In this document: positions 1,823 to 63,515 of the stretch, in pieces
Layout of the letters: every line of letters starts with the position of its first letter
Numbering within the stretch: the first letter of the stretch is position 1
IMG/VR virus record: IMGVR_UViG_3300030329_004647
Coordinates: 124,001 to 188,000 of that record
DNA length: 64,000 bases
Reading direction: 5' to 3' (one strand)
Program-made: the position numbers and the translations under genes
The notes under the pieces: model-generated
Database searches by the model: none
The model's input: the letters and a program-made list of their open reading frames with translations, nothing else
Told to the model about the DNA's origin: nothing

Positions 1823-1830
1823 TATTTATA
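1823..1830 (+). promoter_or_regulatory. Putative late promoter TATTTATA
   Basis: Motif recurs upstream of many structural genes; here upstream of 1848. Confidence 0.6.
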
Positions 1831-1847
1831 ATAAAAAAAAGAATATT

Positions 1848-2141
1848 ATGAATTTTTTCAAAAACATGTTAAGTAGTGAAGGTAAAGTATCTAGTAAGAG
1901 ATTTGTTACCTTCGTATGTCTTTTATTTATGTTAATCGGGTACACCGCTAATTTATTCTGGGATTTCACAATAGATGATAATCTATTCCAGTCACTTCAA
2001 TGGATTGTAATGGCGGGTCTTGGTTTTACAGCTGCAGAGAATTTTTCACCTAAAGGTGAAGAAACACCAGTAGAAGAAGAACCATCACCAACATCTACGA
2101 CTGTAACCCATCAGTATGATTATGATGAGGAAGACATTTAA
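1848..2141 (+). CDS. Small two-TM membrane protein (holin-like)
   Basis: SSKRF followed by two hydrophobic segments and an acidic tail. Confidence 0.45.
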   Translation: MNFFKNMLSSEGKVSSKRFVTFVCLLFMLIGYTANLFWDFTIDDNLFQSLQWIVMAGLGFTAAENFSPKGEETPVEEEPSPTSTTVTHQYDYDEEDI

Positions 2142-2145
2142 AAAC

Positions 2146-2174
2146 AAAAAAACCACTTAATAAGTGGTTTTTTT
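2146..2174. terminator. Bidirectional intrinsic terminator
   Basis: AAAAAAACCACTT-AAT-AAGTGGTTTTTTT between convergent genes. Confidence 0.85.
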
Positions 2175-2195
2175 TATTTCTATGTAATTATTTAA

Positions 2196-2834
2196 TTATC
2201 TTTTTGAAGCGTGATATCCCGCTAATATTGATTTACAATGCTTTTCACTCTTACATTTTCTCCATACACCAAGCTTAGGGTCGTTATCATCTAAAATAAC
2301 CCAACCACCAGCTCTTTTTCTAATACAACCTTTTGGTGAGTCTTCACAGTAGTTTCCACCTTTCTTTTCTTTTAATATTCTTTTTAATCTTTCTACAATA
2401 GTTTTAACTTTTTTTGTAGATTCATTAGCTCCGAATCCCATCATTCCGTGTGCTGGACTATCTGGGTTAGAATCGTCACCCATTCCATCATCAGCCATAT
2501 CATCTTCATCATGTGGTGTTAACTGACCTGTTAGTTTTTCACCAGCCACTTTTTGTAAATTACTAATATCCTCACCCATTTCCTGAGAGATTTTTTTTCT
2601 TCTATTGGCTAAGTACTTGTCTGAGCTATCGACATCACCATCATTATCTATGTCCGCGTCCTCTTTTCCTACAGGGTCTAATTTGGTTTCACCCATCTCC
2701 TGTTTTACTCTTCCAGTTCCTATCATTCCCATATTACCCATGCTCGATATATTATTACCCATTTTTGCTTTTACAGTTTTTTCTATAAGAGCTATGAGTT
2801 CTGATTCTGTTAGTCTAATTTTTTTTGTTTTCAT
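2196..2834 (-). CDS. Putative internal head protein with Dx[DN]xDG motif
   Basis: N-terminal IRLTESELIALIEK; DPVGKEDADIDNDGDVDSSDKYL motif; charged, low complexity. Confidence 0.5.
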   Translation of the reverse strand: MKTKKIRLTESELIALIEKTVKAKMGNNISSMGNMGMIGTGRVKQEMGETKLDPVGKEDADIDNDGDVDSSDKYLANRRKKISQEMGEDISNLQKVAGEKLTGQLTPHDEDDMADDGMGDDSNPDSPAHGMMGFGANESTKKVKTIVERLKRILKEKKGGNYCEDSPKGCIRKRAGGWVILDDNDPKLGVWRKCKSEKHCKSILAGYHASKR

Positions 2835-4321: not shown

Positions 4322-4343
4322 ATCTATTCTTTAATAATAAATA

Positions 4344-6428: not shown

Positions 6429-8534
6429 TTATAAATAAAGTCCATTTGATACTATAGGTGGTATAATGGTTAATCCTGGTGGACCACTCGCGGTAGCTGG
6501 GTCTGATATAGACTGCACCCGTCCATTAGTTGATTTTTCATCATCCATAGATTCTATTAAGGCAAATTGTCCTAATAAATCTAAATTAGGTTCACCACTA
6601 GGCATATCTCCGGTAGGATAACCAAATTCCTCTAGTTTAGTTATTAATTTTTCAAAAGTTCTAAGTGAACTAGTACCAGCTCTTTTCTTAGTCGCGAACA
6701 ACAACCAAGGAGGTACACCAAACGGTACGTCAGGCGCCACCGCTTCCAGTAACCTAAGTAATGTGTCTAAAATACTTTTACAGTCTTTTGCATTACGAAG
6801 TTCATCAATCCAAGGCATTAAAGCGTTAATTAATGCTGTTACTACTTTTATATATTTTTTACCCTTCTCCCCAATTATTCTTTTTAATTTATCCATTAAC
6901 ATTTTGGTTAAATAACCAATTACAATGTTAAATAATATTCTCACAACTTCAGCTAAAACTTCTCTAGCTATTCTTACAACTACTCGTTTAAATATTTTCA
7001 TCCATTCTTTTGGATTTGAAGCTAAAAGAGCGTTTTCATTTAAAAATTTATACACCAGTACCACAGGTAAACAAAGTTTTGGTGATAATAATGCAATCAT
7101 TAATATGTCAGGAAATTTTACAATTAATTCTTCTTTAAAATCTATAGACCAATCTAGTGGATTAAAATAAGGGTCTGGTTCCTTATCTGCAGACTCCGCT
7201 AGTCCATTTTGTATTATTAACTCAAAAGTTTTAAACCCACTACCAGCTTGAACTAGTTCAGCTTGAATAATATCATCTGCTGCATCTATAAAGGTTTGGA
7301 GGTCTAAAGGAATTTCTATTTCTGCACAGGATTGCAGCGCAATAACCCCTTTTCGTTTTCTATTAGTTTCATCCACCAAATTTTGTTGTTCCTCAACATT
7401 AAATCTAAACCATGAATCATCATCATCTAATTCTTGTATAAATTGTTTAGTATCTGTACCTACTTCACCCAAGTCTCCTCCATCACAAGCACCTATTATA
7501 TTATTAAGAACTTTAATTAATTCATTTATCCCTAAAAGGTCAGCAAGATTTACACCACCGTTTCCGAAAGTTATAAGTCCAGATAATAATTCTAATATTG
7601 CTCCTAATATGTTATGTAGTTGGAATAGACGTATGTTCTCAAAATAATCAACTACAAACTCAATTACAGTAAATTTTGTTCCGTCTCCAGGTGATGCTTG
7701 ACCACCAGGACCAGGACACCCATCAAACACACTATTGTTGTCTGCAGCACCACCATTACTAGCTTTGTAATGTGGTGAGATTTTAAGGTAATCACCACCA
7801 TCATATTCTATTGTAAAAAGATTTAAACCACTTTTACCTTGTACTTGATATGGTGTGTTAGGGTTTTGTAATAAAAAATGTAAAAATCTATTCATCGAAA
7901 AAGGTGTTGAACCCGCAACGTAGGGTTCAGCTTCATAAGCAAACTTCCCAACTCCCTCGTCAGGAGATAACTTTAAATTTTTGAATAAATCTATATGAGA
8001 TATTTTTATCTCTATGGGACACGAAATACCATCACCCACAACGGGTACATTCATACTTAAATCACAATTAAAAGCGGCAAGAATTTCTTCTATTACAATA
8101 TGTTTGATTTTAGGTATAACAGTAAATATGGCTTGTTTTATCACCTTACTTAATAAAGCTGAGTAATTAACCTGTGAAGCACGTAACATTTGTTTGTTAG
8201 CTCTTTCACGCCATGCTTGACCTTTATCCCTAGCGTCGTCCGCTTGAGCTTGAAGTTCTTCTTGACCTTGTTTTTTTGCTTTTTTTATGTTCGCACGAAA
8301 GTTCTCTTTTTTTTCTCTAACTTTACTACTGGAATTTTCATAAGCTTGTGTTTCCTTAATTAGAGTTAATAAAAAAGGTAGAGGGTTCTCAACAATTCCT
8401 TGTAGAGCCTTAAAAGTTTTTTTCCACTCTTCTAAGTTTTTCCTTTCCTTCTTTTGACCATCTAATTCTAGTAATCTAGTAAGAGCCTGGATTTGGGCAA
8501 TAATATCCTTTTTATCTTGTTTAGTATCTGACAT
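6429..8534 (-). CDS. Large hypothetical protein, probably virion/baseplate-associated
   Basis: 701-aa ORF in late operon upstream of spike gene. Confidence 0.5.
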   Translation of the reverse strand: MSDTKQDKKDIIAQIQALTRLLELDGQKKERKNLEEWKKTFKALQGIVENPLPFLLTLIKETQAYENSSSKVREKKENFRANIKKAKKQGQEELQAQADDARDKGQAWRERANKQMLRASQVNYSALLSKVIKQAIFTVIPKIKHIVIEEILAAFNCDLSMNVPVVGDGISCPIEIKISHIDLFKNLKLSPDEGVGKFAYEAEPYVAGSTPFSMNRFLHFLLQNPNTPYQVQGKSGLNLFTIEYDGGDYLKISPHYKASNGGAADNNSVFDGCPGPGGQASPGDGTKFTVIEFVVDYFENIRLFQLHNILGAILELLSGLITFGNGGVNLADLLGINELIKVLNNIIGACDGGDLGEVGTDTKQFIQELDDDDSWFRFNVEEQQNLVDETNRKRKGVIALQSCAEIEIPLDLQTFIDAADDIIQAELVQAGSGFKTFELIIQNGLAESADKEPDPYFNPLDWSIDFKEELIVKFPDILMIALLSPKLCLPVVLVYKFLNENALLASNPKEWMKIFKRVVVRIAREVLAEVVRILFNIVIGYLTKMLMDKLKRIIGEKGKKYIKVVTALINALMPWIDELRNAKDCKSILDTLLRLLEAVAPDVPFGVPPWLLFATKKRAGTSSLRTFEKLITKLEEFGYPTGDMPSGEPNLDLLGQFALIESMDDEKSTNGRVQSISDPATASGPPGLTIIPPIVSNGLYL

Positions 8535-8905
8535 TACACTTCATATTCATCACTTTTGTCGTTAGAATCTGAATCTTGTGTTAATAGACTTGAAATTGAT
8601 TCTCTAATATCGTCACTTAAAGAACCAATAGTAGCTGAATTAGGAACTCTCTTATCTATTAAAGAGGAGTGTAATTTAGCTAACTGTAATTTTTTTTCAA
8701 TAGAGGAGTCAACAATTTTTTGTTGTTCTTTGAGAACAGGCCCTAGAAGAGTTAAGTCGGTAGCTTCTTTCATAAAAGAAATCATCTTGTTTTGTATACG
8801 TATAGCAGTAGTTCGTTGTTCTACACATTCATTATAGATTTCTTGCATAAGAGAAAGTACACTTTCATTATCTAACGTTATTTTCTTTTTTTTAGGTCTT
8901 GGCAT
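8534..8905 (-). CDS. Hypothetical helical protein (late gene)
   Basis: 123 aa; TATTTATA 5 nt upstream of ATG. Confidence 0.55.
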   Translation of the reverse strand: MPRPKKKKITLDNESVLSLMQEIYNECVEQRTTAIRIQNKMISFMKEATDLTLLGPVLKEQQKIVDSSIEKKLQLAKLHSSLIDKRVPNSATIGSLSDDIRESISSLLTQDSDSNDKSDEYEV

Positions 8906-8910: not shown

Positions 8911-8918
8911 TATAAATA
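8911..8918 (-). promoter_or_regulatory. Putative late promoter TATTTATA
   Basis: + strand TATAAATA at 8911-8918, heading the 8905-4344 operon. Confidence 0.6.
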
Positions 8919-8923: not shown

Positions 8924-9625
8924 TTACTCATTTCTAAACTGCGAAATTAATTCACCGTATAAAACCTTGTATCTTCTAAGGGCCATCCTAATTTCTTTAG
9001 TGGTTAGACCAGTCATTTCTCTTAGGTGATATAGTATTACATTCTTATTAAATTTATTACCTTCACCACCTATAAAAATCCTTTCAAAGTTCTCGAAAAC
9101 ATCAATAAGTGATAATCCTACCTTGTTTTCATTCTCACTAAGTTTGTTTTCTGACATAAATACCTTTAGTTGGCTTATGTAAATTTTTATAAAATCACTA
9201 ATATTACTTTCCTCATCATCGATATGATACACCATGTCATCTCTTTCCTGAACACTAGTGGAAATATCTTCGTAAGATATTTTTCTTTTTAATTCCTTTT
9301 GGTCTTTCATTATTTGTCCCATTAGATAATTTTTACAAATAGTACCAAAATAGGAATAGGCTTTTTTACCTTTCTCAGGTTTAAATTTATCGGCTTTAGT
9401 TATTAAAAAAGATAATGTGTCAGCATGAATGTCTCTAAAATCTAAGTTACGTCTATATAATTTATAACGTCTTATAATACTATCAATCATCTTATTTAGT
9501 GGAGCACGTAAATTATCATTATAAACTTTATTTTTTTCGCTCCAAGTGGTAGCAGTTAGAAAAACTCTAACAGCTGCCTCCTCATTTTCACCGAAGTAAA
9601 GCCCTTGTGTTCTAGGTCTAGGCAT
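8924..9625 (-). CDS. Phage RNA polymerase sigma factor (T4 gp55-like late sigma)
   Basis: Region-2-like segment FLITKADKFKPEKGKKAYSYFGTICKNYL resembles gp55 F.P....NPFAYFTQI; C-terminal helical segment. Confidence 0.6.
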   Translation of the reverse strand: MPRPRTQGLYFGENEEAAVRVFLTATTWSEKNKVYNDNLRAPLNKMIDSIIRRYKLYRRNLDFRDIHADTLSFLITKADKFKPEKGKKAYSYFGTICKNYLMGQIMKDQKELKRKISYEDISTSVQERDDMVYHIDDEESNISDFIKIYISQLKVFMSENKLSENENKVGLSLIDVFENFERIFIGGEGNKFNKNVILYHLREMTGLTTKEIRMALRRYKVLYGELISQFRNE

Positions 9626-9631
9626 ACTTAC

Positions 9632-12370: not shown

Positions 12371-13105
12371 TTATCCTATAGAGTCAAACACTCTTTCTAT
12401 TTTAGCAATTAATGGATTTCTTACTACATCCGCTTTATTAAATTGTACACAACCAATCCCATCTATGTCTTGAAAGTGGTCCATAAGAAAAGTAAGACCG
12501 TTTCCACCTTTAGAATCTTGCTGTCTTTCGTCACCTAAAAATATCATTTTAGAATCTTTACCTAGTCTAGTCATTATAGTTCTCATATTTTCTTGTGATA
12601 TGTTTTGTGCTTCATCTACAATTATAATAGACCTATCTAGATTAATTCCCCTCATATACGCTATAGGCATCTCTTCAATAGTTTTTAACTCTCTAAGTCT
12701 CTGAGTAATAGCCTGTCCCACCAATTTTTCAAAATTATGGACAAATGAAAACATAAAAGGCTCCATCTTCTCTCTTAATCCACCTTTTAAAAACCCAATT
12801 TCTTCATTTTTTAAAGTAGTCACTGATTTTACGATTACCACTTTTTTATATTTCCTGTATCGTTTTATTAACTTTAAAGCTTCTGCACACGCTAAATACG
12901 TTTTACCAGTACCAGCTGGCCCAGAACAAATAGTCACTTCATTTTCTTTTATAGAATTTACTAATTTTTTTTGATTTCCTGTTTTACATTTAACACTAAT
13001 TGTCATAGTGTCAGTCATTCTAGTTTCCTCAGTATTATTCTGATAAATCCATGCTTCGACCTCTTCTTGTTCTTCTCTACTTAATCTTTTACTTCTTTTA
13101 CTCAT
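12371..13105 (-). CDS. phoH: PhoH-family ATPase
   Basis: GPAGTGKT, IGFLKG, YMRGINL, DEAQN, TRLG, GDERQ, VVRNPL. Confidence 0.92.
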   Translation of the reverse strand: MSKRSKRLSREEQEEVEAWIYQNNTEETRMTDTMTISVKCKTGNQKKLVNSIKENEVTICSGPAGTGKTYLACAEALKLIKRYRKYKKVVIVKSVTTLKNEEIGFLKGGLREKMEPFMFSFVHNFEKLVGQAITQRLRELKTIEEMPIAYMRGINLDRSIIIVDEAQNISQENMRTIMTRLGKDSKMIFLGDERQQDSKGGNGLTFLMDHFQDIDGIGCVQFNKADVVRNPLIAKIERVFDSIG

Positions 13106-13271
13106 TTATAGTTTCTTTTTTAGTGTTTACTGTTATTACGCAAGGTATAGTCTCAATTCGTTCCATAAATTTACCGTAGATTACTTCAAATCTCTCATGT
13201 CTACTTACTAAACTAAAGGGAACCATTGGTTCTCCATGACCATAACTTACCATGTCCCATAATTCATACAT
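13098..13271 (-). CDS. Small hypothetical protein (57 aa, not in ORF track)
   Basis: MYELWDMVSYGHGEPMVPF...KETINE*; ATG overlaps the ugd stop and the end overlaps the phoH start. Confidence 0.55.
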   Translation of the reverse strand: MYELWDMVSYGHGEPMVPFSLVSRHERFEVIYGKFMERIETIPCVITVNTKKETINE

Positions 13272-14149
13272 TATATTTCATTTTTTTCAAGGTTATTAAT
13301 TATTGCTCTACCTTCCATTTTTTCCCAATCCTTGTTAGTCCTAACCATTGTATTAGTGTTATGTGTAGCATCTAACATAGGTGTTTTTATTAAAAGTTTA
13401 TTAGCTTCATGTCTTAACGCTAATAAATCTTTAGGAAAACAATGACCACCAAACCCAAAGTCACCATCTGGCCCAGGAACATTCCAATGTGAGTAACCTA
13501 AACGTTCATCTAATTTAGCATACTCAATTACTTTATCGTAATCAACACCTAACCCTTTACAAACATTATACATTTCATTTGCAAAAGACACTTTAGTAGC
13601 TAAAAAAGTATTAGTTAGATATTTTACCATTTCTGCATATGTAGAATCTGTTTTTACTACATGTACTTTTGGAAAAGCTTTAGAAAAAATAGGTTTAACT
13701 TTAGCGGTAACCTCATTAGGACCACCTAGAATTATTCGGTTTTGATTTTTATAGTCTTCTATTGAATTCGCTTCAGTTAGAAATTCTGGATTATATACTA
13801 AAGATACTCTATTAAATCCTTTTTGTAGTTTTTTAGTAGTTCCAGGGGGTATAGTAGATTTAAGAACAATTGTTCTAGTTTCGTTTCCATAATAATCTTT
13901 AATATCACAATAGTTATTTATTTCACTTAAAACCTCTTCCACAATACCAGTATAACACTTACCCTCATTATCCATAGGTGTTGGTAGACATAAAAAAATT
14001 ATTTTACACCTCTCAACAATATCAACTAGTGTGTTAGTACTAAATTCTGGTTTGTTTAAATCAAAAGTTAATATATTAAAATATTTTTGAAGACCTTCTT
14101 TAACAGCGGTTCCTACAAAACCCTGTCCAACTATTCCTATTTTATCCAT
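13271..14149 (-). CDS. ugd: UDP-glucose/GDP-mannose 6-dehydrogenase family protein (short form)
   Basis: GQGFVG, CLPTP, KSTIPPG, NPEFL, catalytic GFGGHCFPKD; lacks C-terminal UDP-binding domain. Confidence 0.85.
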   Translation of the reverse strand: MDKIGIVGQGFVGTAVKEGLQKYFNILTFDLNKPEFSTNTLVDIVERCKIIFLCLPTPMDNEGKCYTGIVEEVLSEINNYCDIKDYYGNETRTIVLKSTIPPGTTKKLQKGFNRVSLVYNPEFLTEANSIEDYKNQNRIILGGPNEVTAKVKPIFSKAFPKVHVVKTDSTYAEMVKYLTNTFLATKVSFANEMYNVCKGLGVDYDKVIEYAKLDERLGYSHWNVPGPDGDFGFGGHCFPKDLLALRHEANKLLIKTPMLDATHNTNTMVRTNKDWEKMEGRAIINNLEKNEI

Positions 14150-38327: not shown

Positions 38328-38356
38328 ATTATAAAAGACTAAATCGAATATGTCAA
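38328..38356 (-). promoter_or_regulatory. Perfect TTGACA-N17-TATAAT promoter
   Basis: + strand tgtcaa 38351-38356 and attata 38328-38333; ATG at 38322. Confidence 0.7.
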
Positions 38357-41015: not shown

Positions 41016-41032
41016 ATTATATAATCTTTATA

Positions 41033-41067
41033 TATAAATATTAAGTTATGGTAGAATGATATTTATT
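41033..41067. promoter_or_regulatory. Divergent pair of putative late promoters
   Basis: Minus-strand TATTTATA (41040-41033) and plus-strand TATTTATT (41060-41067) in a 56-bp intergenic gap. Confidence 0.6.
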
Positions 41068-41071
41068 ATTA

Positions 41072-50006: not shown

Positions 50007-50046
50007 AAGCTAATTCTTTTACTATAAATATTAGCAACTACGCATT

Positions 50047-50094: not shown

Positions 50095-50703
50095 TTAATC
50101 TTCGTCTGTAATCTTATATTCTAGCTCCTGTCCTACAAGAGGTTCTTCTTTTTCAATCTCTATATCAACTTCGGATTCTTCTTCAGTTGGTGGAGTCATC
50201 ATTTCCTCATATTGTGTTAGTAAGTTTTGAACACCTCTACCAAACAAATCTTCATTACCTATATTATCTCTAAGGTCAAAAATATCTTGTACTAGTCTAT
50301 CTTGAGGAGAAATAGCCACCTCTGTTTCTTCCATTACTCTATGGACTATTCTTTTAAGTGTAGACTCATTTATTTTTACAACTTTTTTAGATTCATTCAT
50401 TCCTAATCCTTTAAATGTTCCATATCCTTCAGAGTTTTCATTTTTACCCTCAACCTCCATTTCTTTCATTTCTTCCATTTCAGTTTTTTCAGTATCCTCC
50501 ATTTCAGCTATCTCATCAGCTATTTTTCGTTGTGCTTTTGTTAACTCCTTAATGTCTGCGTTATACTTACCATGATTTTTTAAACCTTCTTTTGCAATCT
50601 TAAGAGCGTTGTATGCTGCTTTTAAGTCTGTTTTAGTATTCTTTGAATCACCCTCGTATAGGTTCATTAGAGTTTTACGTAGTTTAGATTTTATATTTTC
50701 CAT
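50095..50703 (-). CDS. Charged hypothetical protein (putative internal head protein)
   Basis: Start refined to MENIKSK with TATTTATT at 50727-50720; KKVVKINESTLKRIV motif. Confidence 0.5.
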   Translation of the reverse strand: MENIKSKLRKTLMNLYEGDSKNTKTDLKAAYNALKIAKEGLKNHGKYNADIKELTKAQRKIADEIAEMEDTEKTEMEEMKEMEVEGKNENSEGYGTFKGLGMNESKKVVKINESTLKRIVHRVMEETEVAISPQDRLVQDIFDLRDNIGNEDLFGRGVQNLLTQYEEMMTPPTEEESEVDIEIEKEEPLVGQELEYKITDED

Positions 50704-51192
50704 ACTGTTGTGTTTTAATAATAAATATTTACTACACCAATAAAGATACATTAGGATTATAGTATAAATTTTTTCTTTATAAAAAAGCGGTATTTAATTA
50801 TAATATTTTAATCACATTTAGAGCTAGTCTTTAAAAAGTAAAAAACAATAAAAAAATAGTTAAGTTTGTCGTAAAAATATTAACAACAGAAATAGTAACA
50901 TAGCTAAACTTATGACAATTAGCTGTAATTAAATAAAAATCACCCTAAAACCTTGACTTATTTTACGACAATTTTATATTAAAACTTGGAAAAATTAGAG
51001 TAAATTAGTGAAAATAATGGAAAATAATTGATATTAAAAAAAATACGTCTAACGTGTGTATAAACGTAAGTTTTTTAATAATTAAAATTAAGTTTGTATT
51101 ATTGACTACTATGGTTGGGGTTAAAATATGGGTTTTTAGTAATAATAACGGGTATTTATGACTACCAATAACAGTTATAAAAAATAGTGATT

Positions 51193-53142: not shown

Positions 53143-53172
53143 ATAAATTAAGTTTAGTTTTTAAATAAATAT

Positions 53173-54912: not shown

Positions 54913-54955
54913 CAAATATAATAAATTCTCTAATATAAACAATTAAGTATTTATC
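54913..54955. promoter_or_regulatory. Divergent promoters: minus TTG-N19-TATATTTG (helicase) and plus TATTTATC (neck gene)
   Basis: CAAATATA 54913-54920, CAA 54940-54942; TATTTATC 54948-54955. Confidence 0.65.
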
Positions 54956-56567: not shown

Positions 56568-56728
56568 CCCTCTCCGTATATATCACTTTTTTGTTTACAA
56601 TTTTTTTCTATTAACTTTTCTATATACCTGGATAGGAGTAAACCATGTTTTTTACAATACCTTTTAAGTATTCTATGGTATTCTTCTCGAATCTTTAAAT
56701 TTTTTATTTTTTTGTTGTTTTCTTTCAT
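56564..56728 (-). CDS. Ribbon-helix-helix (Arc/CopG-like) DNA-binding protein, 54 aa (not in ORF track)
   Basis: MKENNKKIKNLKIREEYHRILKRYCKKHGLLLSRYIEKLIEKNCKQKSDIYGEG: beta strand, helix, G turn, helix. Confidence 0.65.
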   Translation of the reverse strand: MKENNKKIKNLKIREEYHRILKRYCKKHGLLLSRYIEKLIEKNCKQKSDIYGEG

Positions 56729-56749
56729 AGGTAGAAAAAAGGTAGAAAA
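56729..56749. repeat. Tandem direct repeat AGGTAGAAAA x2 (11-bp period), candidate operator
   Basis: Copies at 56729-56738 and 56740-56749, abutting the RHH start codon. Confidence 0.55.
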
Positions 56750-56808
56750 TATTCATACTTTACAATAAATAGTACGTTTTTAGCAATACCTTTTCGGTTG
56801 GGAAAAAG

Positions 56809-56816
56809 TATTTATC
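56809..56816 (+). promoter_or_regulatory. Putative late promoter TATTTATC for tail sheath
   Basis: Recurring motif; an opposite copy at 56764-56771 faces the RHH gene. Confidence 0.55.
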
Positions 56817-56855
56817 TAATGATAAAATAAATTTATTTAGTAAAAAAAGACAAAT

Positions 56856-59800
56856 ATGGCTAACGGTAATAATAGAGTATTCGTATCTCCAGGGGTATAC
56901 ACCTCGGAAAAAGATTTAAGTTTTGTAGCACAGAGTGTTGGTGTTACAACATTAGGTTTGGTCGGAGAGACCAAAAAAGGGCCAGCTTTTGAACCAATCT
57001 TTGTAAGTAATTATAGTGACTTTACAACTAGATTTGGTAGTACATCAGCTGACAAATTTGTTGATACACAAATTCCTAAACACGAATTAGCATTTATAGC
57101 AAAATCTTACTTATCACAATCAAATCAATTGTTTGTGACAAGAGTATTAGGATTAAATGGTTATGATGCAGGACCATCTTGGTCAATAACAACAATCGGT
57201 GAAGTAGACCCACTATACGTTTCTGCTGCAACATCAGCTCAAACAACGAGTAACTGGAGTGACATTATTTACATTCCAATGACCTCAACTACCGCTACGC
57301 CAGACGGAATATATTTAACATATAACTCTGCGACAGGAAAGTTTAGTGACCCTATCACTGATATGACAACATTTGGGGGTGCCAATTTCCCAATTCAAAA
57401 TTACCAACTAACAGGCCAAACATTTATTAATGGGTATGGAACTACTTTAGGTACTTTTATTGATGAAATAACCTCTTTTGTTAACACAGTAAATGGTGGG
57501 GACAATATGTCTTGGGATGGTTCAGGACTAAGTCAATACTGGTATTATGGTGTATTAGGTACAGGAACAACTGTTGGTGGTGAAGGAGCAAATAGTTTTT
57601 GTGAACATTACGCTAACACGTGGATGACAGGTAATACATCAGGATTATCCATTCAAGCAATAGACCATGAAAATAGATTAGCTGTTGACGCTTCAAACTT
57701 CTATGATGACCAAAATGATGGTTGGTATGACACTTTATTCGAGTATGAATATGGTGAAGGTGCTAACTGTTACTGTACTTCTTATTCAGGTTCTTCATTT
57801 GATATGTTTGGTTATTCAGCTTTAACAGCTCAAACATATATAGATGAAGTTGACTTAAGTACTAGTGGAGCAAGTACATTCTTTGCTGGTGGACAATTTA
57901 ATAATGACCCAACATCAGGAGGAACAAGTACAGAATGGTCAGGAGCTACAGGAGTAAATGGAACAGGTGGACAAGCTGTAATATCGTTTACGGCTACTAG
58001 TAGTGGTGGTCCAGAAACTTGGGCATACAGAATTGGTTCAACATCAGCTAACGCAACAGGTGTAGTAGCTAATGTATGGAGTTCCCTATACCAAACACCA
58101 GTGGGAACATATGATAGTATAGGACCTGTAACGACACATCCTTATGTACCATCTGATTTTGACGAGGTATTATCAGGAGGAACAGCATCCACAACAACAG
58201 TATTAAAGAGTAATCCATATCCAGTACCATTAACGCCATTCGATTTCGCGAAGAGTGGTACAACTTGTGATACTAGTATAGGAGCTTACTCAGCTGTTTC
58301 AGTAATTTATAGTGGATTTGCTAATATTGGTAGTTTAGTAGGTGGTAACTTAGGTGGAGCAGGAACTGGATTCGACCAAGGTAATCTATCTTCAGGTATT
58401 TCACATACCTTTGTTGGTTTCTCTGGAGCTGACGGACCAAACTCATATTCTGGGACACTTGCTGTTAATATGGTATTCTATAGTGCTGATTGTCAATCAC
58501 AAAATCTGTTAACATTACAATTAAGTGGTTGTGCAGCTGAATATCAAAATGTAAGTGCAGACACTGAATATCACAACTTAGTAGTGGCAACAATGAGAGC
58601 TAGAGGACAAAGTTCACTTTCTACAGGAGGACCAGTCTATACAATTAGTGGTTCATCATCATCCTCAACAGGAGCTTACGGTGATGTAACATTTAATTGT
58701 TTAGGAGCTTACCAACCAATAGTTGATGACCCATTCTTTAATTTTGGTATAAGTGCTAGAACGGATGGTGGAGCAACATATAACTTTGATGTGAGCATGA
58801 ATACATCATCTAAAAATTACCTACCAAAAGTATTAGGTAGAAATGTATTTGATAAAAAAATGGAGGAAGTTCCTATTTTTGTTGAGGAAGTTTACCCTAA
58901 TATCCTAAAATATGGATTTAATAGAAATAGAATTAGAGGCCTAAACTGTTGTTTATTAAAATTACCAGCAGCAAGATGGAACAATACAGGTATGGATTCT
59001 ATAGGTTGGTACATGCAACAATGGCAAACACCAGAAACACCTTACGTAGTTTCAGAATTACGAGGTGAGGATGTATATAGACTATTTAAATTTGTTTCTA
59101 TTTCAGACGGTACAGAAGCAAATAGAGAATATAAAGTATCAATTATAAACATTTCATTTGAAAGATTAGAGTTTGATGTATTAGTTAGAGATTTCTATGA
59201 TAGTGACGCTAGTCCTGTTGTTTATGAAAAATTCACAAGATGTAGTTTAGACCCATCATTACCTTCTTTTATAGGAAGAAAAATAGGTACTTCAGATGGT
59301 CAATACGAATTAAGGTCTAAATACACAATGTTATATTTAACTGAAGAGGTTTTAGATGGAACACTTAAAGACGCTGTTCCAGCAGGTTTTGATTACTACG
59401 ATTTTAGAAATTATGAAAACGGTGCTGGTAAAACGTGTAGAGCTATTCCACCGATGTTAAAATATAAAACAAAATACTTTACGGCTGGAGAAGTAGTTTA
59501 TGACCCACCTTATGATAACGCTGACGGAAGTGCTAACTCTTATATATCACCAGGTGACAATGTGAGAAAAACATATTTAGGTATTTCTGACACAGTAGGT
59601 GCAGCTATAGATTTTGATTTCTTCGAGTATAAAGGTAAGAAAACACCAGTATCGGTTTGTACAGATGTTAATGGTGTAAGTTGGGGAACAATCAGAAAAG
59701 GTTTCCATATGGATTCAGGAGCTACAATAATTGTTGCGGGTTCTGGAACGTATATAACACAATCGGGTACAACTCTTAGTGGTGACTCTATCTTTGAGGT

Positions 59801-60941
59801 GGGAGCAGCAGACTTTAGAGGTGAACCAGCATCAAGTAATCACCCATACAAAAAACTAAATTCTCGTAAATTTACTTTAGCACCTTATGGTGGTTTTGAT
59901 GGATGGGATGAATACCGTAAGTTTAGAAGTAATGGTGATTCCTATAGACTTGGACTACAAGGATTCTTAAATGGAGCGTGTAATGACGCGGTTTACCCGT
60001 CAGCTGTAGGAGACGGTTCATTTAAAGCTCTAAGTAGTACTGAAGCAAATACGGATTATTTTGCATACCTTAGAGGTGTACAAACATTCCAAAACCCAGA
60101 AGCGGTTAATATTAATGTATTTGCTACACCAGGTATTGACTACGTTAACAACCAATCTCTAGTTAAAGAATCTATAGATATGGTAGAAAGTCAAAGAGCT
60201 GACTCGTTATATATTACGACAACACCTGACTTTAACATGTACGTACCAACATCTTCAGATGTGACAAATCAAATATCACCAACAGAAGCTGGAGATAATT
60301 TAGAGGACTCACTAATAGATTCTAACTATACGGCAACGTATTATCCATGGATTTTGGTTAGAGATGACAATAGTAATAAACAAATCTATATACCACCAAC
60401 ATCAGAGGTTACTAGAAACTTAGCATTAACTGATAATGTAGCATTCCCTTGGTTCGCTTCAGCAGGTTATACACGTGGTTTAGTAAACGCACAAAGAGCT
60501 AGAAGAAAACTGACTCAGGACGAAAGAGATACGTTATATGTTGATAGAATTAACCCAATAGCGACATTCTCAGATGTAGGACCAATTATTTTTGGACAGA
60601 AAACTCTACAAATTAAAGAGTCTGCTCTTGACAGAATTAATGTTAGAAGATTATTATTACAAACAAGAAAACTAATTTCCGCGGTAGCTGTTAGACTACT
60701 ATTCGAACAAAATGATGATGTAGTAAGACAACAATTCTTAGACCTAGTTAACCCTATATTAGATTCTATTAGAAGAGATAGAGGTTTAACAGACTTTAGA
60801 GTTGTACTTTCTAACGACCCAGAAGAAATTGATAGAAATGAATTAAATGGTAAGATTTACTTAAAACCTACAAGAGCGTTAGAGTTTATCTTCATAGAAT
60901 TCTTGATAACACCAACTGGAGCAGAATTTGAATCAGTTTAA
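56856..60941 (+). CDS. Contractile tail sheath protein (gp18-like) with large insertion
   Basis: VSPGVYTSEKDLS, GETKKGPAFEP, WFASAGYTRG, RINPI, GQKTLQ, LDRINVRRLL, IYLKPTRALEFI. Confidence 0.92.
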   Translation: MANGNNRVFVSPGVYTSEKDLSFVAQSVGVTTLGLVGETKKGPAFEPIFVSNYSDFTTRFGSTSADKFVDTQIPKHELAFIAKSYLSQSNQLFVTRVLGLNGYDAGPSWSITTIGEVDPLYVSAATSAQTTSNWSDIIYIPMTSTTATPDGIYLTYNSATGKFSDPITDMTTFGGANFPIQNYQLTGQTFINGYGTTLGTFIDEITSFVNTVNGGDNMSWDGSGLSQYWYYGVLGTGTTVGGEGANSFCEHYANTWMTGNTSGLSIQAIDHENRLAVDASNFYDDQNDGWYDTLFEYEYGEGANCYCTSYSGSSFDMFGYSALTAQTYIDEVDLSTSGASTFFAGGQFNNDPTSGGTSTEWSGATGVNGTGGQAVISFTATSSGGPETWAYRIGSTSANATGVVANVWSSLYQTPVGTYDSIGPVTTHPYVPSDFDEVLSGGTASTTTVLKSNPYPVPLTPFDFAKSGTTCDTSIGAYSAVSVIYSGFANIGSLVGGNLGGAGTGFDQGNLSSGISHTFVGFSGADGPNSYSGTLAVNMVFYSADCQSQNLLTLQLSGCAAEYQNVSADTEYHNLVVATMRARGQSSLSTGGPVYTISGSSSSSTGAYGDVTFNCLGAYQPIVDDPFFNFGISARTDGGATYNFDVSMNTSSKNYLPKVLGRNVFDKKMEEVPIFVEEVYPNILKYGFNRNRIRGLNCCLLKLPAARWNNTGMDSIGWYMQQWQTPETPYVVSELRGEDVYRLFKFVSISDGTEANREYKVSIINISFERLEFDVLVRDFYDSDASPVVYEKFTRCSLDPSLPSFIGRKIGTSDGQYELRSKYTMLYLTEEVLDGTLKDAVPAGFDYYDFRNYENGAGKTCRAIPPMLKYKTKYFTAGEVVYDPPYDNADGSANSYISPGDNVRKTYLGISDTVGAAIDFDFFEYKGKKTPVSVCTDVNGVSWGTIRKGFHMDSGATIIVAGSGTYITQSGTTLSGDSIFEVGAADFRGEPASSNHPYKKLNSRKFTLAPYGGFDGWDEYRKFRSNGDSYRLGLQGFLNGACNDAVYPSAVGDGSFKALSSTEANTDYFAYLRGVQTFQNPEAVNINVFATPGIDYVNNQSLVKESIDMVESQRADSLYITTTPDFNMYVPTSSDVTNQISPTEAGDNLEDSLIDSNYTATYYPWILVRDDNSNKQIYIPPTSEVTRNLALTDNVAFPWFASAGYTRGLVNAQRARRKLTQDERDTLYVDRINPIATFSDVGPIIFGQKTLQIKESALDRINVRRLLLQTRKLISAVAVRLLFEQNDDVVRQQFLDLVNPILDSIRRDRGLTDFRVVLSNDPEEIDRNELNGKIYLKPTRALEFIFIEFLITPTGAEFESV

Positions 60942-61307: not shown

Positions 61308-61365
61308 TTATAACCATATAGTTTATGTAAGTTGTATTAACAAAATGTTTTAATATTTATAAGAT

Positions 61366-62226
61366 ATGAGTAAAATTATCATAACAGCAAAACAACTAGA
61401 ACATCTAAGTAATGTAGTTAAAGAACAAGCTAGAGCAAATAATGGTGCTGTAAGAGCTTATTCTTTTGATTGGGACGACAATATCCTCCATATGCCTACT
61501 AAAATTGCAATTGATTACAATAACGGCACAGAATGGGTACCAACCCTCATAACCACTGAAATGTTTTCTAAGGTAAGAGAAAATGAAAATTTTAGGGTAA
61601 ATGAAGATTCCTTTGTTAATTTTAGAAATGATAATGTTTTTTTTGACGACCTTAATGAAGCTTTACAAAAAAGAAGTTTCGCTCCTTCTTTTGAAAAATT
61701 TAAAGAATCTTTAATATACGCTAATCCTTTTTCTATTATTACAGCAAGAGGACATACACCAGAAGTTTTTCCTAAAGGTATAAAAGTAATAATTGGAAAT
61801 ACTTTTAGTGAGGGAGAACTAGAAGATATGTTATTTAACATTAAGAAGAAATATCCAGAAACTGTGGACTATTCACCGTGGGACGCGATTGATTTTTATT
61901 TAAATGAAAATGAATACCACCCTGTAACATCCGAAGAATTCGGTAAAAAATTCGGAAATAGGTTCATCAATACGGATAACCCTGAAGAAGCTAAAAAAAC
62001 AGCACTTAGAAATTATATAGAAAAAGTTGTAAACGGTGTTAGTAAAATAGAAGATGGTAATTATTCACAATTATCTATAGGTTTTAGTGACGATGACTAC
62101 GGTAATATAAGTGCTGTAATAAATTTAATAAAAGATGAACTAAACCAAAAGTATCCACAAGTAAATTTTGTTGTATATGACACATCTAGTGGTGACATAA
62201 ACAAAATTGTAGTTAAAAGAGAATAG
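61366..62226 (+). CDS. HAD-superfamily hydrolase-like protein
   Basis: FDWDDNIL, IITARGH, IGFSDDD; TATTTATA at 61354-61361. Confidence 0.6.
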   Translation: MSKIIITAKQLEHLSNVVKEQARANNGAVRAYSFDWDDNILHMPTKIAIDYNNGTEWVPTLITTEMFSKVRENENFRVNEDSFVNFRNDNVFFDDLNEALQKRSFAPSFEKFKESLIYANPFSIITARGHTPEVFPKGIKVIIGNTFSEGELEDMLFNIKKKYPETVDYSPWDAIDFYLNENEYHPVTSEEFGKKFGNRFINTDNPEEAKKTALRNYIEKVVNGVSKIEDGNYSQLSIGFSDDDYGNISAVINLIKDELNQKYPQVNFVVYDTSSGDINKIVVKRE

Positions 62227-62296
62227 AAACAAGAAAGTTTTCAAATATAGATATATTTATAATAGTAAATAAAAGAAATTTTTAAAAATACACAAT

Positions 62297-62785
62297 ATGG
62301 CTGATTTATTAATGAAAATGCCCGTTCCTTATGAACCGAAAAGAAAGAATCGGTTTATTTTGAGATTTGATTCTTCACTGGGTTTAAACGAGTGGTACGT
62401 TGAAAGTACATCAAGACCACAAGTAACAATAAATTCTGTAGAAATACCTTTCCTAAACACATCTACTTATGTGGCAGGAAGATTTACATGGAATACTGTT
62501 AATGTAACATTCAGAGACCCAATCGGTCCTTCAGCAGCACAAGCGTTGATGGAGTGGGTTAGACTACACGCTGAGTCAGTTACTGGTAGAATGGGATATG
62601 CTGCGGGATATAAGAAAAATATCGATTTAGAATTATTAGACCCTACAGGAGTTGTTGTAGAAAAATGGGTAATGCAAGGTGTATTTTTAACAGATGTTAA
62701 TTTTAATGACTTATCTTATAGTGATGACGGACTATCTAACATTTCTGCTACACTAAGACCAGACAGATGTATATTAGTTTACTAA
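62297..62785 (+). CDS. Tail tube protein (gp19-like)
   Basis: YEPKRKNRF, YVAGRFTW, TFRDPI, MEWVR, LLDPTGVVVEKW; TATTTATA at 62254-62261. Confidence 0.88.
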   Translation: MADLLMKMPVPYEPKRKNRFILRFDSSLGLNEWYVESTSRPQVTINSVEIPFLNTSTYVAGRFTWNTVNVTFRDPIGPSAAQALMEWVRLHAESVTGRMGYAAGYKKNIDLELLDPTGVVVEKWVMQGVFLTDVNFNDLSYSDDGLSNISATLRPDRCILVY

Positions 62786-62806
62786 AACTATAAAACATAC
62801 AATATT

Positions 62807-62832
62807 AAAAAACCCCAGTTATGGGGTTTTTT
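62807..62832. terminator. Bidirectional intrinsic terminator
   Basis: AAAAAACCCCA-GTTA-TGGGGTTTTTT. Confidence 0.8.
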
Positions 62833-63445
62833 TATTTAAAGGGGCAACATTTTTATTTTTGGGATAAGGTTGTTTAATCCACTTAGTTTTAAGGGTTTTA
62901 TCAAAAACTAACATGTATCTATGTTTTCTAGTCCTATCCCTCCATTCACCTCGTTTATTTTTTACGGGTCCTCGAGAATGTTTTATAAACGTACCATCAC
63001 CCAACTCAAACCAAAAATCTTTCTTTTTATCTGTTAATCCATAATACGAAAAATTGGTTGCCTGATAAATGTAACCATTATGTAGTTTGGAATCAGCATA
63101 AGATATTACAGCTTTAAGAACTGTTTCTTTTTTAAGAAGTTTAATAGATTTTGAGACGAACCAAGATAATAAATTTTTAAAATTGTGTTCGGGATGTACA
63201 CACAGTCTTCCCAGTTCATATATTCCCTCCTGAGAACTCCTATCTAAACCAAAACAACCTTTAACTAATTCAGGCACAGAGGGAGCATGAAAGATACATA
63301 CACTTATTAACTCATCTTGTTTAAAAATTCCGTAATTAAAACCACATCTGAAACCTTTACTTTCTTTTGACAAGTAATGATATTCATTAAGTAGCTTAGC
63401 GCATTCGGATTTAGTAATAGCTCTAATGCTTAAATTTTGAAACAT
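62819..63445 (-). CDS. Mom-like (GNAT-fold) DNA modification protein
   Basis: YHYL, YGIF, ELGRLC, SWFVSKSIKLL, VISYADS, GYIYQATNF. Confidence 0.65.
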   Translation of the reverse strand: MFQNLSIRAITKSECAKLLNEYHYLSKESKGFRCGFNYGIFKQDELISVCIFHAPSVPELVKGCFGLDRSSQEGIYELGRLCVHPEHNFKNLLSWFVSKSIKLLKKETVLKAVISYADSKLHNGYIYQATNFSYYGLTDKKKDFWFELGDGTFIKHSRGPVKNKRGEWRDRTRKHRYMLVFDKTLKTKWIKQPYPKNKNVAPLNKKTP

Positions 63446-63515
63446 ATAATAATTATATTTTATAATGTTGATATAAAATTATAATAAACTTAAATTAGTA
63501 TTTAAACGCAAAAAT

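What the first reader, a model, noticed from the sequence alone, without database searches (positions are those of the whole stretch)
1823..63506. Late promoter motif TATTTAT(A), the reverse complement of T4's TATAAATA, alongside a gp55-like sigma
Seen: sense-strand TATTTAT[A/T/C/G] lies upstream of genes at 1823, 4343, 8918, 41040, 41060, 50030, 50727, 51153, 53171, 54948, 56771, 56809, 61354 and 62254 (variant TATTTAAA at 63499). It is always oriented with the downstream gene, including in divergent pairs. ORF 8924-9625 resembles gp55. Known: T4 gp55 reads TATAAATA on the sense strand. Inference: this sigma has a different -10 specificity, and a naive T4-motif scan would assign the wrong strand.
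Basis: partly seen in the sequence, partly recalled or inferred. Interest (0 to 1): 0.62.

Follow-up and report, generated by a model that had tools for sequence, protein, structure and literature searches.

The report
Phage late promoter TATTTAT with own sigma
An uncultured 232-kb marine phage marks the starts of its virion and many other genes with a strictly conserved, strand-specific heptamer (R-TATTTAT-W). This is most likely a -10-only promoter read by the phage's own divergent sigma factor, and the same heptamer and sigma family recur in hundreds of relatives and in a cultured Microcystis phage.

Summary
TATTTAT is the most enriched 7-mer in the 60 nt upstream of genes on the sense strand: 66 of 258 genes against 5 expected. 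In intergenic regions between same-strand genes it runs 45 sense to 5 antisense, and TATTTATA 27 to TATAAATA 1. There is no -35-like element. The distance to the ATG peaks at 5 nt (leaderless layout) and at 12-18 nt.

Genes behind the motif include terminase, portal, the major capsid operon, tail sheath and a tail lysin. DNA ligase and the SNF2 helicase instead carry canonical Bacteroidota promoters (TTG...TAnnTTTG).

The motif is depleted inside genes, kept in 80 IMG/VR relatives, and enriched in Microcystis phage Mel-JY01, whose sigma homologue is 25% identical.

ORF 8924-9625 has a sigma region-2 fold (Z 8.2 to T4 gp55) and a modelled interface with beta-prime clamp helices. It also has an extra C-terminal domain, and no gp45 was found in this incomplete contig.

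"Reverse complement of T4" really means two central substitutions, TAT-AA-ATA to TAT-TT-ATA. No RNA data exist, so transcription starts and the sigma-motif link are inferred. I rate it a new variant of a known kind.

The parts
8924..9625 (-). Phage sigma factor, 233 aa. It has an N-terminal sigma region-2 domain (residues ~10-122) and a C-terminal helical domain (~142-231) of uncertain type.
   Evidence: phrog_234 E 4.9e-5. Sigma70_r2 21.3-23.3 bits against a cut-off of 24. AF2 model pLDDT 73.5. VIA-align Z 8.5 to sigB, 8.2 to T4 gp55 chain 7d7d_F over 118 residues, 7.7 to AR9 gp226. Modelled interface with F. johnsoniae beta-prime 272-346: score 0.74 vs best control 0.00.
8912..8918 (-). TATTTAT site 6 nt before the ATG of gene 8534-8905, immediately downstream of the sigma stop codon.
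   Evidence: The same position keeps TATTTAT 4-6 nt before the ATG in 64 of 74 relatives, in otherwise variable spacers; 71 of 74 have the heptamer in that spacer.
8534..8905 (-). Conserved 123-aa gene (MPRPKKKK...) always placed after the sigma gene and always behind the motif. Function unknown; it may be a partner of the sigma.
   Evidence: no family hit; conserved synteny and N-terminus in relatives.
1823..1829 (+). TATTTAT site 18 nt before ATG 1848. It overlaps a divergent host-type box on the other strand.
4337..4343 (-). TATTTAT site 15 nt before ATG 4321, directly after the stop of the upstream same-strand gene.
6431..6437 (-).
41034..41040 (-). TATTTAT site 18 nt before ATG 41015. It heads the 47-gene minus-strand block that ends at 2196 and contains the sigma gene.
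41060..41066 (+). TATTTAT site exactly 5 nt before ATG 41072 (leaderless layout). It heads the unit that contains DNA polymerase B.
   Evidence: polymerase identified.
50024..50030 (-). TATTTAT site 17 nt before ATG 50006, preceded by a terminator-like hairpin and T-run.
50721..50727 (-). TATTTAT site 17 nt before the in-frame ATG at 50703, the likely true start of ORF 50095-50751.
51153..51159 (+). TATTTAT site 33 nt before ATG 51193 (74-aa ORF).
53165..53171 (-). TATTTAT site 22 nt before ATG 53142.
54948..54954 (+). TATTTAT site 6 nt before ATG 54961, divergent from the host-type promoter of the SNF2 helicase gene.
56809..56815 (+). TATTTAT site 40 nt before the ATG of the tail sheath gene 56856-60941.
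   Evidence: sheath identified by phrog_23 E 7.7e-54.
56765..56771 (-). TATTTAT copy preceding only a 54-aa ORF; a doubtful promoter.
61354..61360 (+). TATTTAT site exactly 5 nt before ATG 61366, with a terminator-like hairpin upstream.
62254..62260 (+). TATTTAT site 36 nt before ATG 62297.
1790..1797 (-). Second promoter class: a host-type Bacteroidota -7 box TATCTTTG with TTG at -33, followed by TAGT and the ATG at 1785 (leaderless layout).
   Evidence: Box position -12..-5 relative to the start is taken from PMC9723704.
54913..54920 (-). Host-type -7 box TATATTTG with TTG at -33, 6 nt before the ATG (54906) of the SNF2 helicase gene.
   Evidence: helicase identified.

Best explanation
R-TATTTAT-W is the non-template-strand -10-like element of the phage-specific promoters of this jumbo phage. 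It has no -35 partner. Transcription most likely starts at a purine 5-7 nt downstream of the heptamer. In about a fifth of cases that purine is the A of the ATG, giving leaderless mRNAs. In most others the leader is only about 7-13 nt and A-rich, which suits a host that does not use Shine-Dalgarno sequences.

The reader of the motif is most likely host RNA polymerase core carrying the product of ORF 8924-9625. This is a divergent sigma whose region-2 domain docks on the beta-prime clamp helices and captures flipped non-template bases, as T4 gp55 does. Early functions (ligase, SNF2 helicase, proteases) instead use the host's own sigma-A promoters (TTG at -33, TAnnTTTG at -12..-5).

Compared with T4's TATAAATA, the element keeps T1 A2 T3 and A6 T7 A8 and changes only the two central bases from AA to TT. 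The specificity change is therefore small, and is plausibly tied to the gp55 H95 to Tyr/Phe and T99 to Gly/Ser replacements in the recognition segment.

Shown here: motif, strand, spacing, conservation, depletion in genes, gene classes, sigma fold. Inferred: transcription starts, which protein reads the motif, timing of expression, residue-level specificity.
For: - Enrichment and strand: top 7-mer on the sense strand, 66 vs 5.1 expected. Co-directional intergenic regions: 45 sense vs 5 antisense, TATTTATA 27 vs TATAAATA 1, shuffle 5.9 +/- 2.4.
- Positive control: the same pipeline on T4 75-125 kb returns TATAAATA, 12 sense vs 5 antisense, as the top 8-mer.
- Architecture: no conserved column from -60 to -2; R at -1; A at the 6th/7th base after the heptamer. 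All seven positions are near-invariant; no one-mismatch variant is enriched.
- Spacing: 11 sites at exactly 5 nt and 3 at 6 nt, then a 12-18 nt class. Host-type boxes TAnnTTTG sit 4 nt before the ATG, i.e. the same register, and that box is mapped to -12..-5 in F. psychrophilum (PMC9723704).
- DNA-level selection: in coding DNA the motif is depleted against synonymous-codon shuffles, 39 vs 64.0 +/- 6.1 on the sense strand (z -4.1) and 55 vs 69.0 +/- 6.9 on the antisense strand.
- Unit boundaries: terminator-like hairpins lie within 70 nt upstream of 9 of 64 sites, against 1.25% of random positions.
- Gene classes: terminase L, portal, tail sheath, a tailspike/virion operon, a lytic tail protein and the Gp23-like capsid operon lie behind the motif. 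DNA ligase, SNF2 helicase, a peptidase and a Lon-like protease lie behind host-type boxes.
- Conservation: in 80 relatives with sigma 54-69% identical it is again the top 7-mer, 196 vs 46 in co-directional regions. 71 of 74 relatives keep the heptamer in the otherwise variable spacer after the sigma gene, 64 of them 4-6 nt before the ATG.
- Cross-phylum: in Microcystis phage Mel-JY01 (sigma 25% identical) ATATTTAT is the top 8-mer, 19 sense vs 2 antisense. In co-directional regions TATTTAT is 25 vs 7 with shuffle 4.7 +/- 2.1, and it lies before the terminase, tail tube and other genes.
- Recognition segment: it is the best-kept stretch between the two sigmas, KAYSYFGTICKNYL vs RAFSYFSIIAKNYL.
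- Sigma identity: fold matches; hhalign to gp55 71-124; modelled beta-prime interface 0.74 vs control 0.00, with at least 83% contact agreement between runs and partner pLDDT at least 78.
- No alternative polymerase: no RNAP beta/beta-prime or T7-type RNAP was detected in the contig.
- gp55 mechanism: it flips A-12, A-9 and A-8 (PMC7892883).
Against: - No transcriptome or 5'-end data exist. All 20 sequencing runs that hold the stretch are DNA metagenomes kept as contigs.
- The sequence link to gp55 is weak: hhalign E 0.0096 at 4% probability, Pfam below cut-off, Foldseek E >= 0.04. At Z about 8, many sigma region-2 domains match equally well.
- The protein has a second domain that gp55 lacks. 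It ends differently from gp55's clamp-binding tail, and no gp45-like clamp was found.
- The sigma gene has no recognisable promoter of its own. It lies at the end of a block whose only clear upstream signal is another TATTTAT site, so how it is first expressed is unexplained.
- The contig is about 72% complete, so a phage RNA polymerase or other reader could lie in the missing part.
- The complex score could reflect the model's memory of solved sigma-core complexes.
Confidence: 0.7

Rival explanations
1. The heptamer is a real promoter element, but it is read by something other than ORF 8924's product. Candidates are host sigma-A (possibly re-targeted by a phage protein, as T4 AsiA/MotA do), another host sigma, or an unrecognised phage RNA polymerase encoded among the large unannotated proteins or in the missing ~28% of the genome.
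For: The motif shares T1, A2, T5 and T7 and the same register with the host box TAnnTTTG. The sigma-motif link is only correlative. Several proteins of 1,000-2,000 aa have no annotation. The contig is incomplete.
Against: The same heptamer is enriched in a cyanobacterial phage whose host sigma-A differs, and that phage keeps the sigma homologue with its recognition segment conserved. Strict invariance and the lack of a -33 element are unlike housekeeping promoters. No RNAP beta/beta-prime or T7-type domains were detected. The sigma is invariant at the putative DNA-melting aromatics across the 26 aligned family members, and the family has thousands of members.
Confidence: 0.17
2. The heptamer acts at RNA level, as a translation-initiation enhancer or an RNA-processing site upstream of start codons, not as a promoter.
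For: It lies close to start codons (4-41 nt), is strand-specific, and the host class lacks Shine-Dalgarno sites, so some other signal might be needed.
Against: It is absent from tightly packed operons, including nearly all of the 47-gene block, so most genes are translated without it. Spacing to the ATG is bimodal and broad. In Mel-JY01 it lies 14-45 nt upstream with a purine-rich, SD-like stretch in between at many sites. It follows terminator-like hairpins. It is also depleted on the antisense strand of genes, which an RNA signal would not explain. At 5-nt spacing it would lie outside a transcript that starts at the ATG.
Confidence: 0.06
3. The true element is T4-type TATAAATA on the opposite strand, and the apparent sense orientation is an artefact of divergent gene pairs. 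A second version of this rival is that the whole pattern is AT-rich chance.
For: The two 8-mers are reverse complements. In divergent spacers such as 41016-41071 either reading is geometrically possible. The whole-window count is below shuffle expectation.
Against: In spacers between same-strand genes the ratio is 45:5 for the heptamer and 27:1 for the octamer, and 196:46 in relatives. Convergent spacers hold 1 copy on each strand. Spacing is phased to the downstream ATG. Same-composition 7-mers are not enriched. The same pipeline returns the opposite orientation in T4.
Confidence: 0.02

Closest known systems
Bacteriophage T4 late transcription: gp55 sigma with the TATAAATA late promoter (plus gp33 and the gp45 clamp)
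   Same: A phage-encoded, highly diverged sigma with a region-2 homology domain. An 8-bp, near-invariant, -10-only promoter with no -35 element. The motif sits in front of virion genes. The phage has a T4-like Gp23 capsid protein. T1 A2 T3 / A6 T7 A8 of the element are identical, including the two adenines that gp55 buries in deep pockets (PMC7892883).
   Different: The central two bases are TT instead of AA. By the weak hhalign alignment, the residue matching gp55 H95 (shallow -9 pocket) is Tyr/Phe and the one matching T99 is Gly/Ser. The protein is 233 aa with an extra ~95-aa C-terminal helical domain and no T4-like clamp-binding tail. No gp45 was detected in the held contig. The spacing to the ATG is much shorter (4-18 nt, often leaderless, against 14-28 nt in T4). 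The motif also heads non-structural units.
Bacteroidota housekeeping promoters (sigma-A: TTG at -33, TAnnTTTG at -12..-5)
   Same: Same register relative to the ATG of leaderless genes. Shared T1, A2, T5 and T7. Both classes occur side by side in this genome.
   Different: The phage element has A at position 6 and W at position 8 instead of T and G. It has no -33 TTG, tolerates no mismatches, and also occurs in a cyanobacterial phage.
Other phage-encoded sigmas with their own promoter classes (Bacillus SPO1 gp28 and gp33/34, from my own knowledge; the AR9 non-virion RNAP promoter-specificity subunit)
   Same: A phage-encoded specificity subunit redirects transcription to phage promoters. The AR9 subunit matches the model's N-terminal domain at Z 7.7.
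   Different: SPO1 sigmas use bipartite -35/-10 promoters. The AR9 subunit serves a phage-encoded polymerase and reads the template strand of uracil-containing DNA (PMC5449584). No phage polymerase was found here.

Membership tests
T4 gp55-type late sigma | Sigma region-2 homology domain | tested here: met
   VIA-align Z 8.2 to gp55 chain 7d7d_F over 118 residues, and Z 8.4-8.5 to sigB/SigC/AlgU region 2. phrog_234 E 4.9e-5. Pfam Sigma70_r2 is just below cut-off. The fold does not discriminate gp55 from other sigma region-2 domains.
T4 gp55-type late sigma | Single-domain protein of ~185 aa without a region 4; helix-loop-helix after region 2 | tested here: not met
   233 aa, with a second helical domain at residues 142-231 that weakly matches the C-terminal part of sigma-H at Z 5.8.
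T4 gp55-type late sigma | C-terminal sliding-clamp-binding motif, and dependence on gp45 and gp33 | tested here: inconclusive
   The C-terminus (…YGELISQFRNE) is unlike gp55's …SLDFLYEAND. No PF02916 clamp was found in the contig, but the contig is ~72% complete. gp33 was not searched for as a family; the small gene next to the sigma (8534-8905) matched no PHROG or Pfam family.
T4 gp55-type late sigma | Recognises a -10-only 8-bp element with consensus TATAAATA on the non-template strand | tested here: not met
   The -10-only architecture is met, but the consensus is R-TATTTAT-W. Sense-strand TATAAATA occurs once against 27 TATTTATA in co-directional spacers.
T4 gp55-type late sigma | Binds RNAP core through the beta-prime clamp helices | tested here: met
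   Model only. Score 0.74 vs best control 0.00; this mark was reached by 51 of 78 solved complexes and 2 of 108 mismatched pairs. Interface: beta-prime 272-346 with sigma 28-40, 65-79 and 112-121. The score may reflect the model's memory of solved sigma-core complexes.
Sigma-70 family (Pfam Sigma70_r2 / r4) | Pfam region 2 and region 4 above the gathering score | tested here: not met
   r2 scores 21.3 bits and 23.3 bits against a cut-off of 24. No r4 hit at E <= 0.01. A few relatives do carry a precomputed PF04542 hit.
Bacteroidota sigma-A promoter (the second class in this genome) | TTG at -33, a 17-21 nt spacer, and TAnnTTTG at -12..-5 | tested here: met
   11 intergenic matches to the full pattern, 6 of them with the box 4 nt before an ATG. 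Box position from PMC9723704. Transcription starts were not mapped.

The most novel reading that the evidence does not exclude
A very large, almost wholly uncultured clade of phages with T4-like capsids, many on contigs over 200 kb, shares one ancient late-transcription system. The sigma search scored its 8,000-candidate limit and 7,975 of those 90%-identity clusters matched, so the true number is larger; 1,541 50%-identity clusters match at E <= 0.001. The system would consist of a two-domain sigma unrelated in detail to gp55 and an invariant R-TATTTAT-W promoter, kept across hosts as different as Bacteroidota-like bacteria and Microcystis. It would routinely produce leaderless or near-leaderless late mRNAs. 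If so, the AA to TT switch relative to T4 would map to a few pocket residues (gp55 H95/T99 equivalents), giving a natural experiment on how region 2 of sigma reads flipped bases.
Probability: 0.5. Interest if true: 0.7.

Novelty: new variant of a known kind. Interest (0 to 1): 0.6.

Why it matters
- It gives a simple, testable promoter rule for a phage group that is abundant in marine and freshwater metagenomes and has almost no cultured members: R-TATTTAT-W on the sense strand, with the start about 6 nt downstream. This helps with calling transcription units, choosing start codons (for example 50703 rather than 50751), and separating host-driven from phage-driven genes.
- It shows that scanning distant T4 relatives with the T4 consensus puts promoters on the wrong strand.
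- It offers a natural specificity variant of a gp55-like region 2, with candidate residues to test.
- It suggests that leaderless late mRNAs are common in these phages.
- Mel-JY01, which is cultured, provides an experimental entry point.

Tried and rejected
- Megablast of 25 kb against 50,697 phage records: no match.
- tblastn with the sigma found only Mel-JY01; with the polymerase, only distant Salinibacter and Nostoc phages.
- Sequencing runs: 20 holders, all DNA metagenomes kept as contigs and none RNA. Read laying was therefore not used, because contigs cannot show starts or strand.
- A PDB sequence search with the family profile gave only noise, plus SigA1 at E 0.39.
- Foldseek against the PDB listed sigma factors, but at E 0.04-1.
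- A host search with the GDP-mannose dehydratase returned unrelated taxa (Hyphomonas, Prochlorococcus) at ~48% identity and is uninformative.
- Searching the 59 motif-less upstream spacers for a third (middle) promoter class found nothing beyond A/T-rich words.
- Searching the minus-strand block for the sigma gene's own promoter found nothing convincing.
- Sigma-70-type sites are not enriched: 90 vs 97.4 +/- 10.3.
- A palindromic operator for a dimeric regulator was rejected. Information content is 1.4 bits per position in the heptamer but at most 0.42 in the would-be right half.
- Three distant family members were looked up. One useful 20-kb locus (L099) carries few heptamers and is too small to judge; two contigs were under 2.1 kb.
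- Literature searches for TATTTATA/ATATTTAT as a phage promoter and for Mel-JY01 found nothing relevant.
- Only genetic code 11 was used.

Full report
**Where the window lies.** The window is bases 124,001-188,000 of a single 232,028-bp IMG/VR virus contig. The contig has 32% G+C, is linear, and CheckV estimates it about 72% complete. Near-identical DNA occurs in about 20 marine and seawater metagenome runs from 14 studies, all DNA and all held as contigs. No close relative is in the phage record collection. The phage encodes a T4-like Gp23 capsid protein, terminase, portal, a 1,361-aa tail sheath and a family-B DNA polymerase.

**Checking the observation.**
- Every listed TATTTAT is present on the stated strand.
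- The raw window count (43) is lower than dinucleotide shuffles give (58.7 +/- 7.1). The reason is that the word is concentrated in the 3% of non-coding DNA and depleted in genes.
- I called 258 ORFs over the whole contig and counted 7-mers in -60..-1. TATTTAT is the most enriched word on the sense strand: 66 genes against 5.1 expected, and 25 on the antisense strand.
- The clean strand test uses spacers between genes on the same strand. There it is 45 sense vs 5 antisense, TATTTATA 27 vs TATAAATA 1, with a shuffle mean of 5.9 +/- 2.4 and maximum 15. Convergent spacers hold one copy on each strand. Among words of the same composition the next best has 19.
- The same script run on T4 bases 75,001-125,000 returns TATAAATA as the top 8-mer, 12 sense vs 5 antisense. 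The opposite orientation here is therefore not an artefact of the method.

**Anatomy of the motif.**
- Aligning the 64 intergenic sense sites shows seven invariant positions. A purine precedes them (A 42, G 12 of 64) and A or T follows.
- There is no informative column anywhere from -60 to -2, so there is no -35 partner.
- No single-mismatch variant is enriched in the sense orientation, here or in relatives. The heptamer is essentially all-or-none, and the TATTTAA at 63499 is not supported.
- The 6th and 7th bases after the heptamer are mostly A, a plausible initiating purine.
- The distance from the heptamer to the ATG is bimodal: exactly 5 nt in 11 cases and 6 nt in 3, then a class at 12-18 nt.

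**A second promoter class calibrates the register.**
- Eleven spacers carry the full Bacteroidota housekeeping pattern, TTG, 17-21 nt, TAnnTTTG. Six of them have the box followed by four bases (five TAGT, one TAAT) and the ATG (box-only hits).
- In Flavobacterium psychrophilum that box was mapped to -12..-5 (PMC9723704). These phage genes would therefore be leaderless, starting at the A of the ATG.
- TATTTATW followed by four bases and the ATG is the same register. The phage element thus sits where a -10/-7 element should, on the sense strand.
- This also points to a Bacteroidota host. No Shine-Dalgarno-like word is enriched upstream of genes, and sigma-70-type sites are not above chance.

**Which genes carry which signal.**
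- Behind TATTTAT: terminase large subunit (5 nt), portal, the unit holding the Gp23-like capsid protein, tail sheath, a virion-structural/tailspike operon, and a lytic tail protein.
- Behind host-type boxes: DNA ligase, SNF2 helicase, a peptidase, an AAA protein operon, and the unit holding a Lon-like protease.
- This fits a two-step programme, host-driven first and phage-driven later.
- The phage class is broader than 'late', however. It also heads the unit with the DNA polymerase (41060) and the 47-gene minus-strand block from 41015 to 2196. Most of that block is a roughly 30-kb sugar-nucleotide and glycosyltransferase cluster, followed by the sigma gene and a few more genes.

**Evidence that it acts on DNA as a promoter.**
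- Inside genes the heptamer is depleted relative to synonymous-codon shuffles: 39 vs 64.0 +/- 6.1 on the sense strand (z -4.1, 0 of 200 shuffles as low). The antisense strand shows 55 vs 69.0 +/- 6.9, and the antisense extended word is also depleted (z -3.8). Three of four other same-composition words are not depleted. Avoidance on both strands is what selection against stray promoters predicts, not what an RNA signal predicts.
- Strict terminator-like hairpins with T-runs lie within 70 nt upstream of 9 of 64 sites. The rate is 1.25% at random positions and 3 of 191 at motif-less gene starts.
- The motif is absent inside tightly packed operons.

**Conservation.**
- The sigma search hit its 8,000-candidate limit, and 7,975 of those 90%-identity clusters matched, some on contigs up to 424 kb. 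An exhaustive search finds 1,541 50%-identity clusters at E <= 0.001.
- In 80 IMG/VR loci with sigma 54-69% identical (1.48 Mb), TATTTAT is again the top sense 7-mer, 258 vs 27.5 expected. In co-directional spacers it is 196 vs 46, with spacing peaks at 4-6 and 12-16 nt. These loci are homologous regions, so they are not independent counts.
- They do give a footprint. In 71 of 74 loci (63 distinct sequences) the spacer after the sigma stop codon varies in length and sequence but keeps TATTTAT, and in 64 of them it lies 4-6 nt before the ATG of the next gene.

**Cross-phylum test.**
- The only cultured phage with a detectable homologue is Microcystis phage Mel-JY01, at 25% identity.
- In 150 kb of its genome ATATTTAT is the top 8-mer upstream of genes, 19 sense vs 2 antisense. 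In co-directional spacers TATTTAT is 25 vs 7, with shuffles at 4.7 +/- 2.1.
- It lies before the large terminase gene, the tail tube gene and other genes in the virion-gene region. There the leaders are longer, many with a purine-rich stretch before the ATG.
- A cyanobacterial host's housekeeping sigma differs from a Bacteroidota one. The shared motif therefore goes with the phage, and the shared sigma is the obvious candidate reader. The best-conserved stretch between the two sigmas is KAYSYFGTICKNYL against RAFSYFSIIAKNYL.

**The sigma itself.**
- Sequence evidence is weak: phrog_234 E 4.9e-5, Sigma70_r2 below cut-off, and hhalign to T4 gp55 at E 0.0096 over residues 66-119 vs 71-124.
- The AlphaFold model has pLDDT 73.5.
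- Its N-terminal domain aligns to sigma region-2 domains at Z 8.4-8.5. It aligns to T4 gp55 in the gp45-dependent activation complex (7d7d_F) at Z 8.2 with the longest alignment (118 residues), and to AR9 gp226 at Z 7.7.
- Foldseek also lists sigma factors, but at E 0.04-1.
- A complex model of residues 1-135 with F. johnsoniae beta-prime 200-400 scores 0.74 against 0.00 for the best control. That mark was reached by 51 of 78 solved complexes and 2 of 108 mismatches; runs agree in at least 83% of contacts and partner pLDDT is at least 78. The interface falls on beta-prime 272-346, the clamp-helix region. This may partly reflect the model's memory of solved sigma-core complexes.
- The C-terminal domain (142-231) is not in gp55. 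It weakly resembles the C-terminal part of sigma-H (Z 5.8), yet no -35 element exists.
- The protein ends unlike gp55's clamp-binding tail. No gp45-type clamp and no RNAP beta/beta-prime or T7-type polymerase was found in the held contig.

**Relation to T4.**
- gp55 flips non-template A-12 (deep pocket, Y97), A-9 (shallow pocket, N13/H95) and A-8 (deep pocket, T99) of TATAAATA (PMC7892883).
- Written in the same frame, TATTTATA keeps A2 and A6 and all flanking bases and changes only positions 4-5. Because TAT..ATA is self-complementary, those two substitutions make the word the reverse complement of T4's.
- In the hhalign alignment gp55 F86, Y97 and N104 correspond to invariant F81, Y92 and N99. 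H95 corresponds to Y90 (Phe in Mel-JY01) and T99 to G94 (Ser in Mel-JY01). This is a low-confidence alignment and a hypothesis, not a finding.

**What stays open.**
- The sigma gene has no promoter of its own. In relatives it overlaps the upstream gene by TAATG, and nothing host-like lies upstream in the block. How the first sigma is made is unexplained.

**Verdict.** It is best described as a new specificity variant of the phage late-sigma/-10-only promoter system, conserved across a large uncultured clade.

Noticed in passing
window 1790-1797(-), 54913-54920(-); genome 4018, 74476, 95921, 98634, 123863: Canonical Bacteroidota promoters (TTG at -33, TAnnTTTG) precede early-type genes, often with the box exactly 4 nt before the ATG. 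This implies leaderless early mRNAs and a Bacteroidota host.
   Followed up: yes
window 9632-41015 (-): A roughly 30-kb run of sugar-nucleotide and glycan-synthesis genes: GDP-mannose 4,6-dehydratase, two DegT-type aminotransferases, nucleotidyl transferases, UDP-glucose dehydrogenase and several glycosyltransferases. It lies upstream of the sigma gene, and glycosyltransferases also precede the sigma in a distant relative (L099).
   Followed up: partly
L007:124-528 (-) = genome 90124-90528, outside the window: A full-length tmRNA gene in the phage genome: Rfam RF00023, 107.9 bits, E 6e-43. ARAGORN reports the tag peptide GKTLAKLATLGLVREESAVTVA. No tRNA genes were found in the parts of the contig scanned (the window and ten other loci).
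   Followed up: partly
window 38328-38356 (-): A perfect 12-of-12 sigma-70 consensus, TTGACA, 17 nt, TATAAT, lies 5 nt before the ATG of gene 37090-38322. It is inside the glycan block, in a genome where such sites are otherwise not above chance (90 vs 97.4).
   Followed up: partly
window 8534-8905 (-): A 123-aa gene always follows the sigma gene and always sits behind the heptamer. Its N-terminus (MPRPKKKK) resembles that of the sigma (MPRPRTQG). It has no family hit and is a possible co-factor.
   Followed up: partly
window 9626-9631 and loci L016-L095: The sigma gene has no promoter of its own. In most relatives its ATG overlaps the stop of the upstream gene (TAATG), so it is co-transcribed with the glycan cluster. 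How it is first expressed is unexplained.
   Followed up: partly
window 12371-14149 (-): The UDP-glucose/GDP-mannose dehydrogenase ORF (13271-14149) has only the N-terminal and central domains. A 165-nt gap (13106-13270) follows, then another ORF. The gene may be split, frameshifted or interrupted.
   Followed up: no
window 50752-51186 and 56568-56855: Two long non-coding stretches (435 and 288 nt) sit between divergent or same-strand genes. There is no Rfam match at gathering threshold and no tRNA.
   Followed up: partly
window 56856-60941 (+): The tail sheath protein is 1,361 aa, but only residues ~1065-1359 match sheath families. The first ~1,060 residues are unannotated.
   Followed up: no
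L099:16386-16414: In a 284-kb relative, a 29-nt divergent spacer holds TATTTAT-T-ATAAATA. The heptamer is therefore present on both strands, each copy 10-13 nt before its own ATG: a compact back-to-back promoter pair.
   Followed up: no
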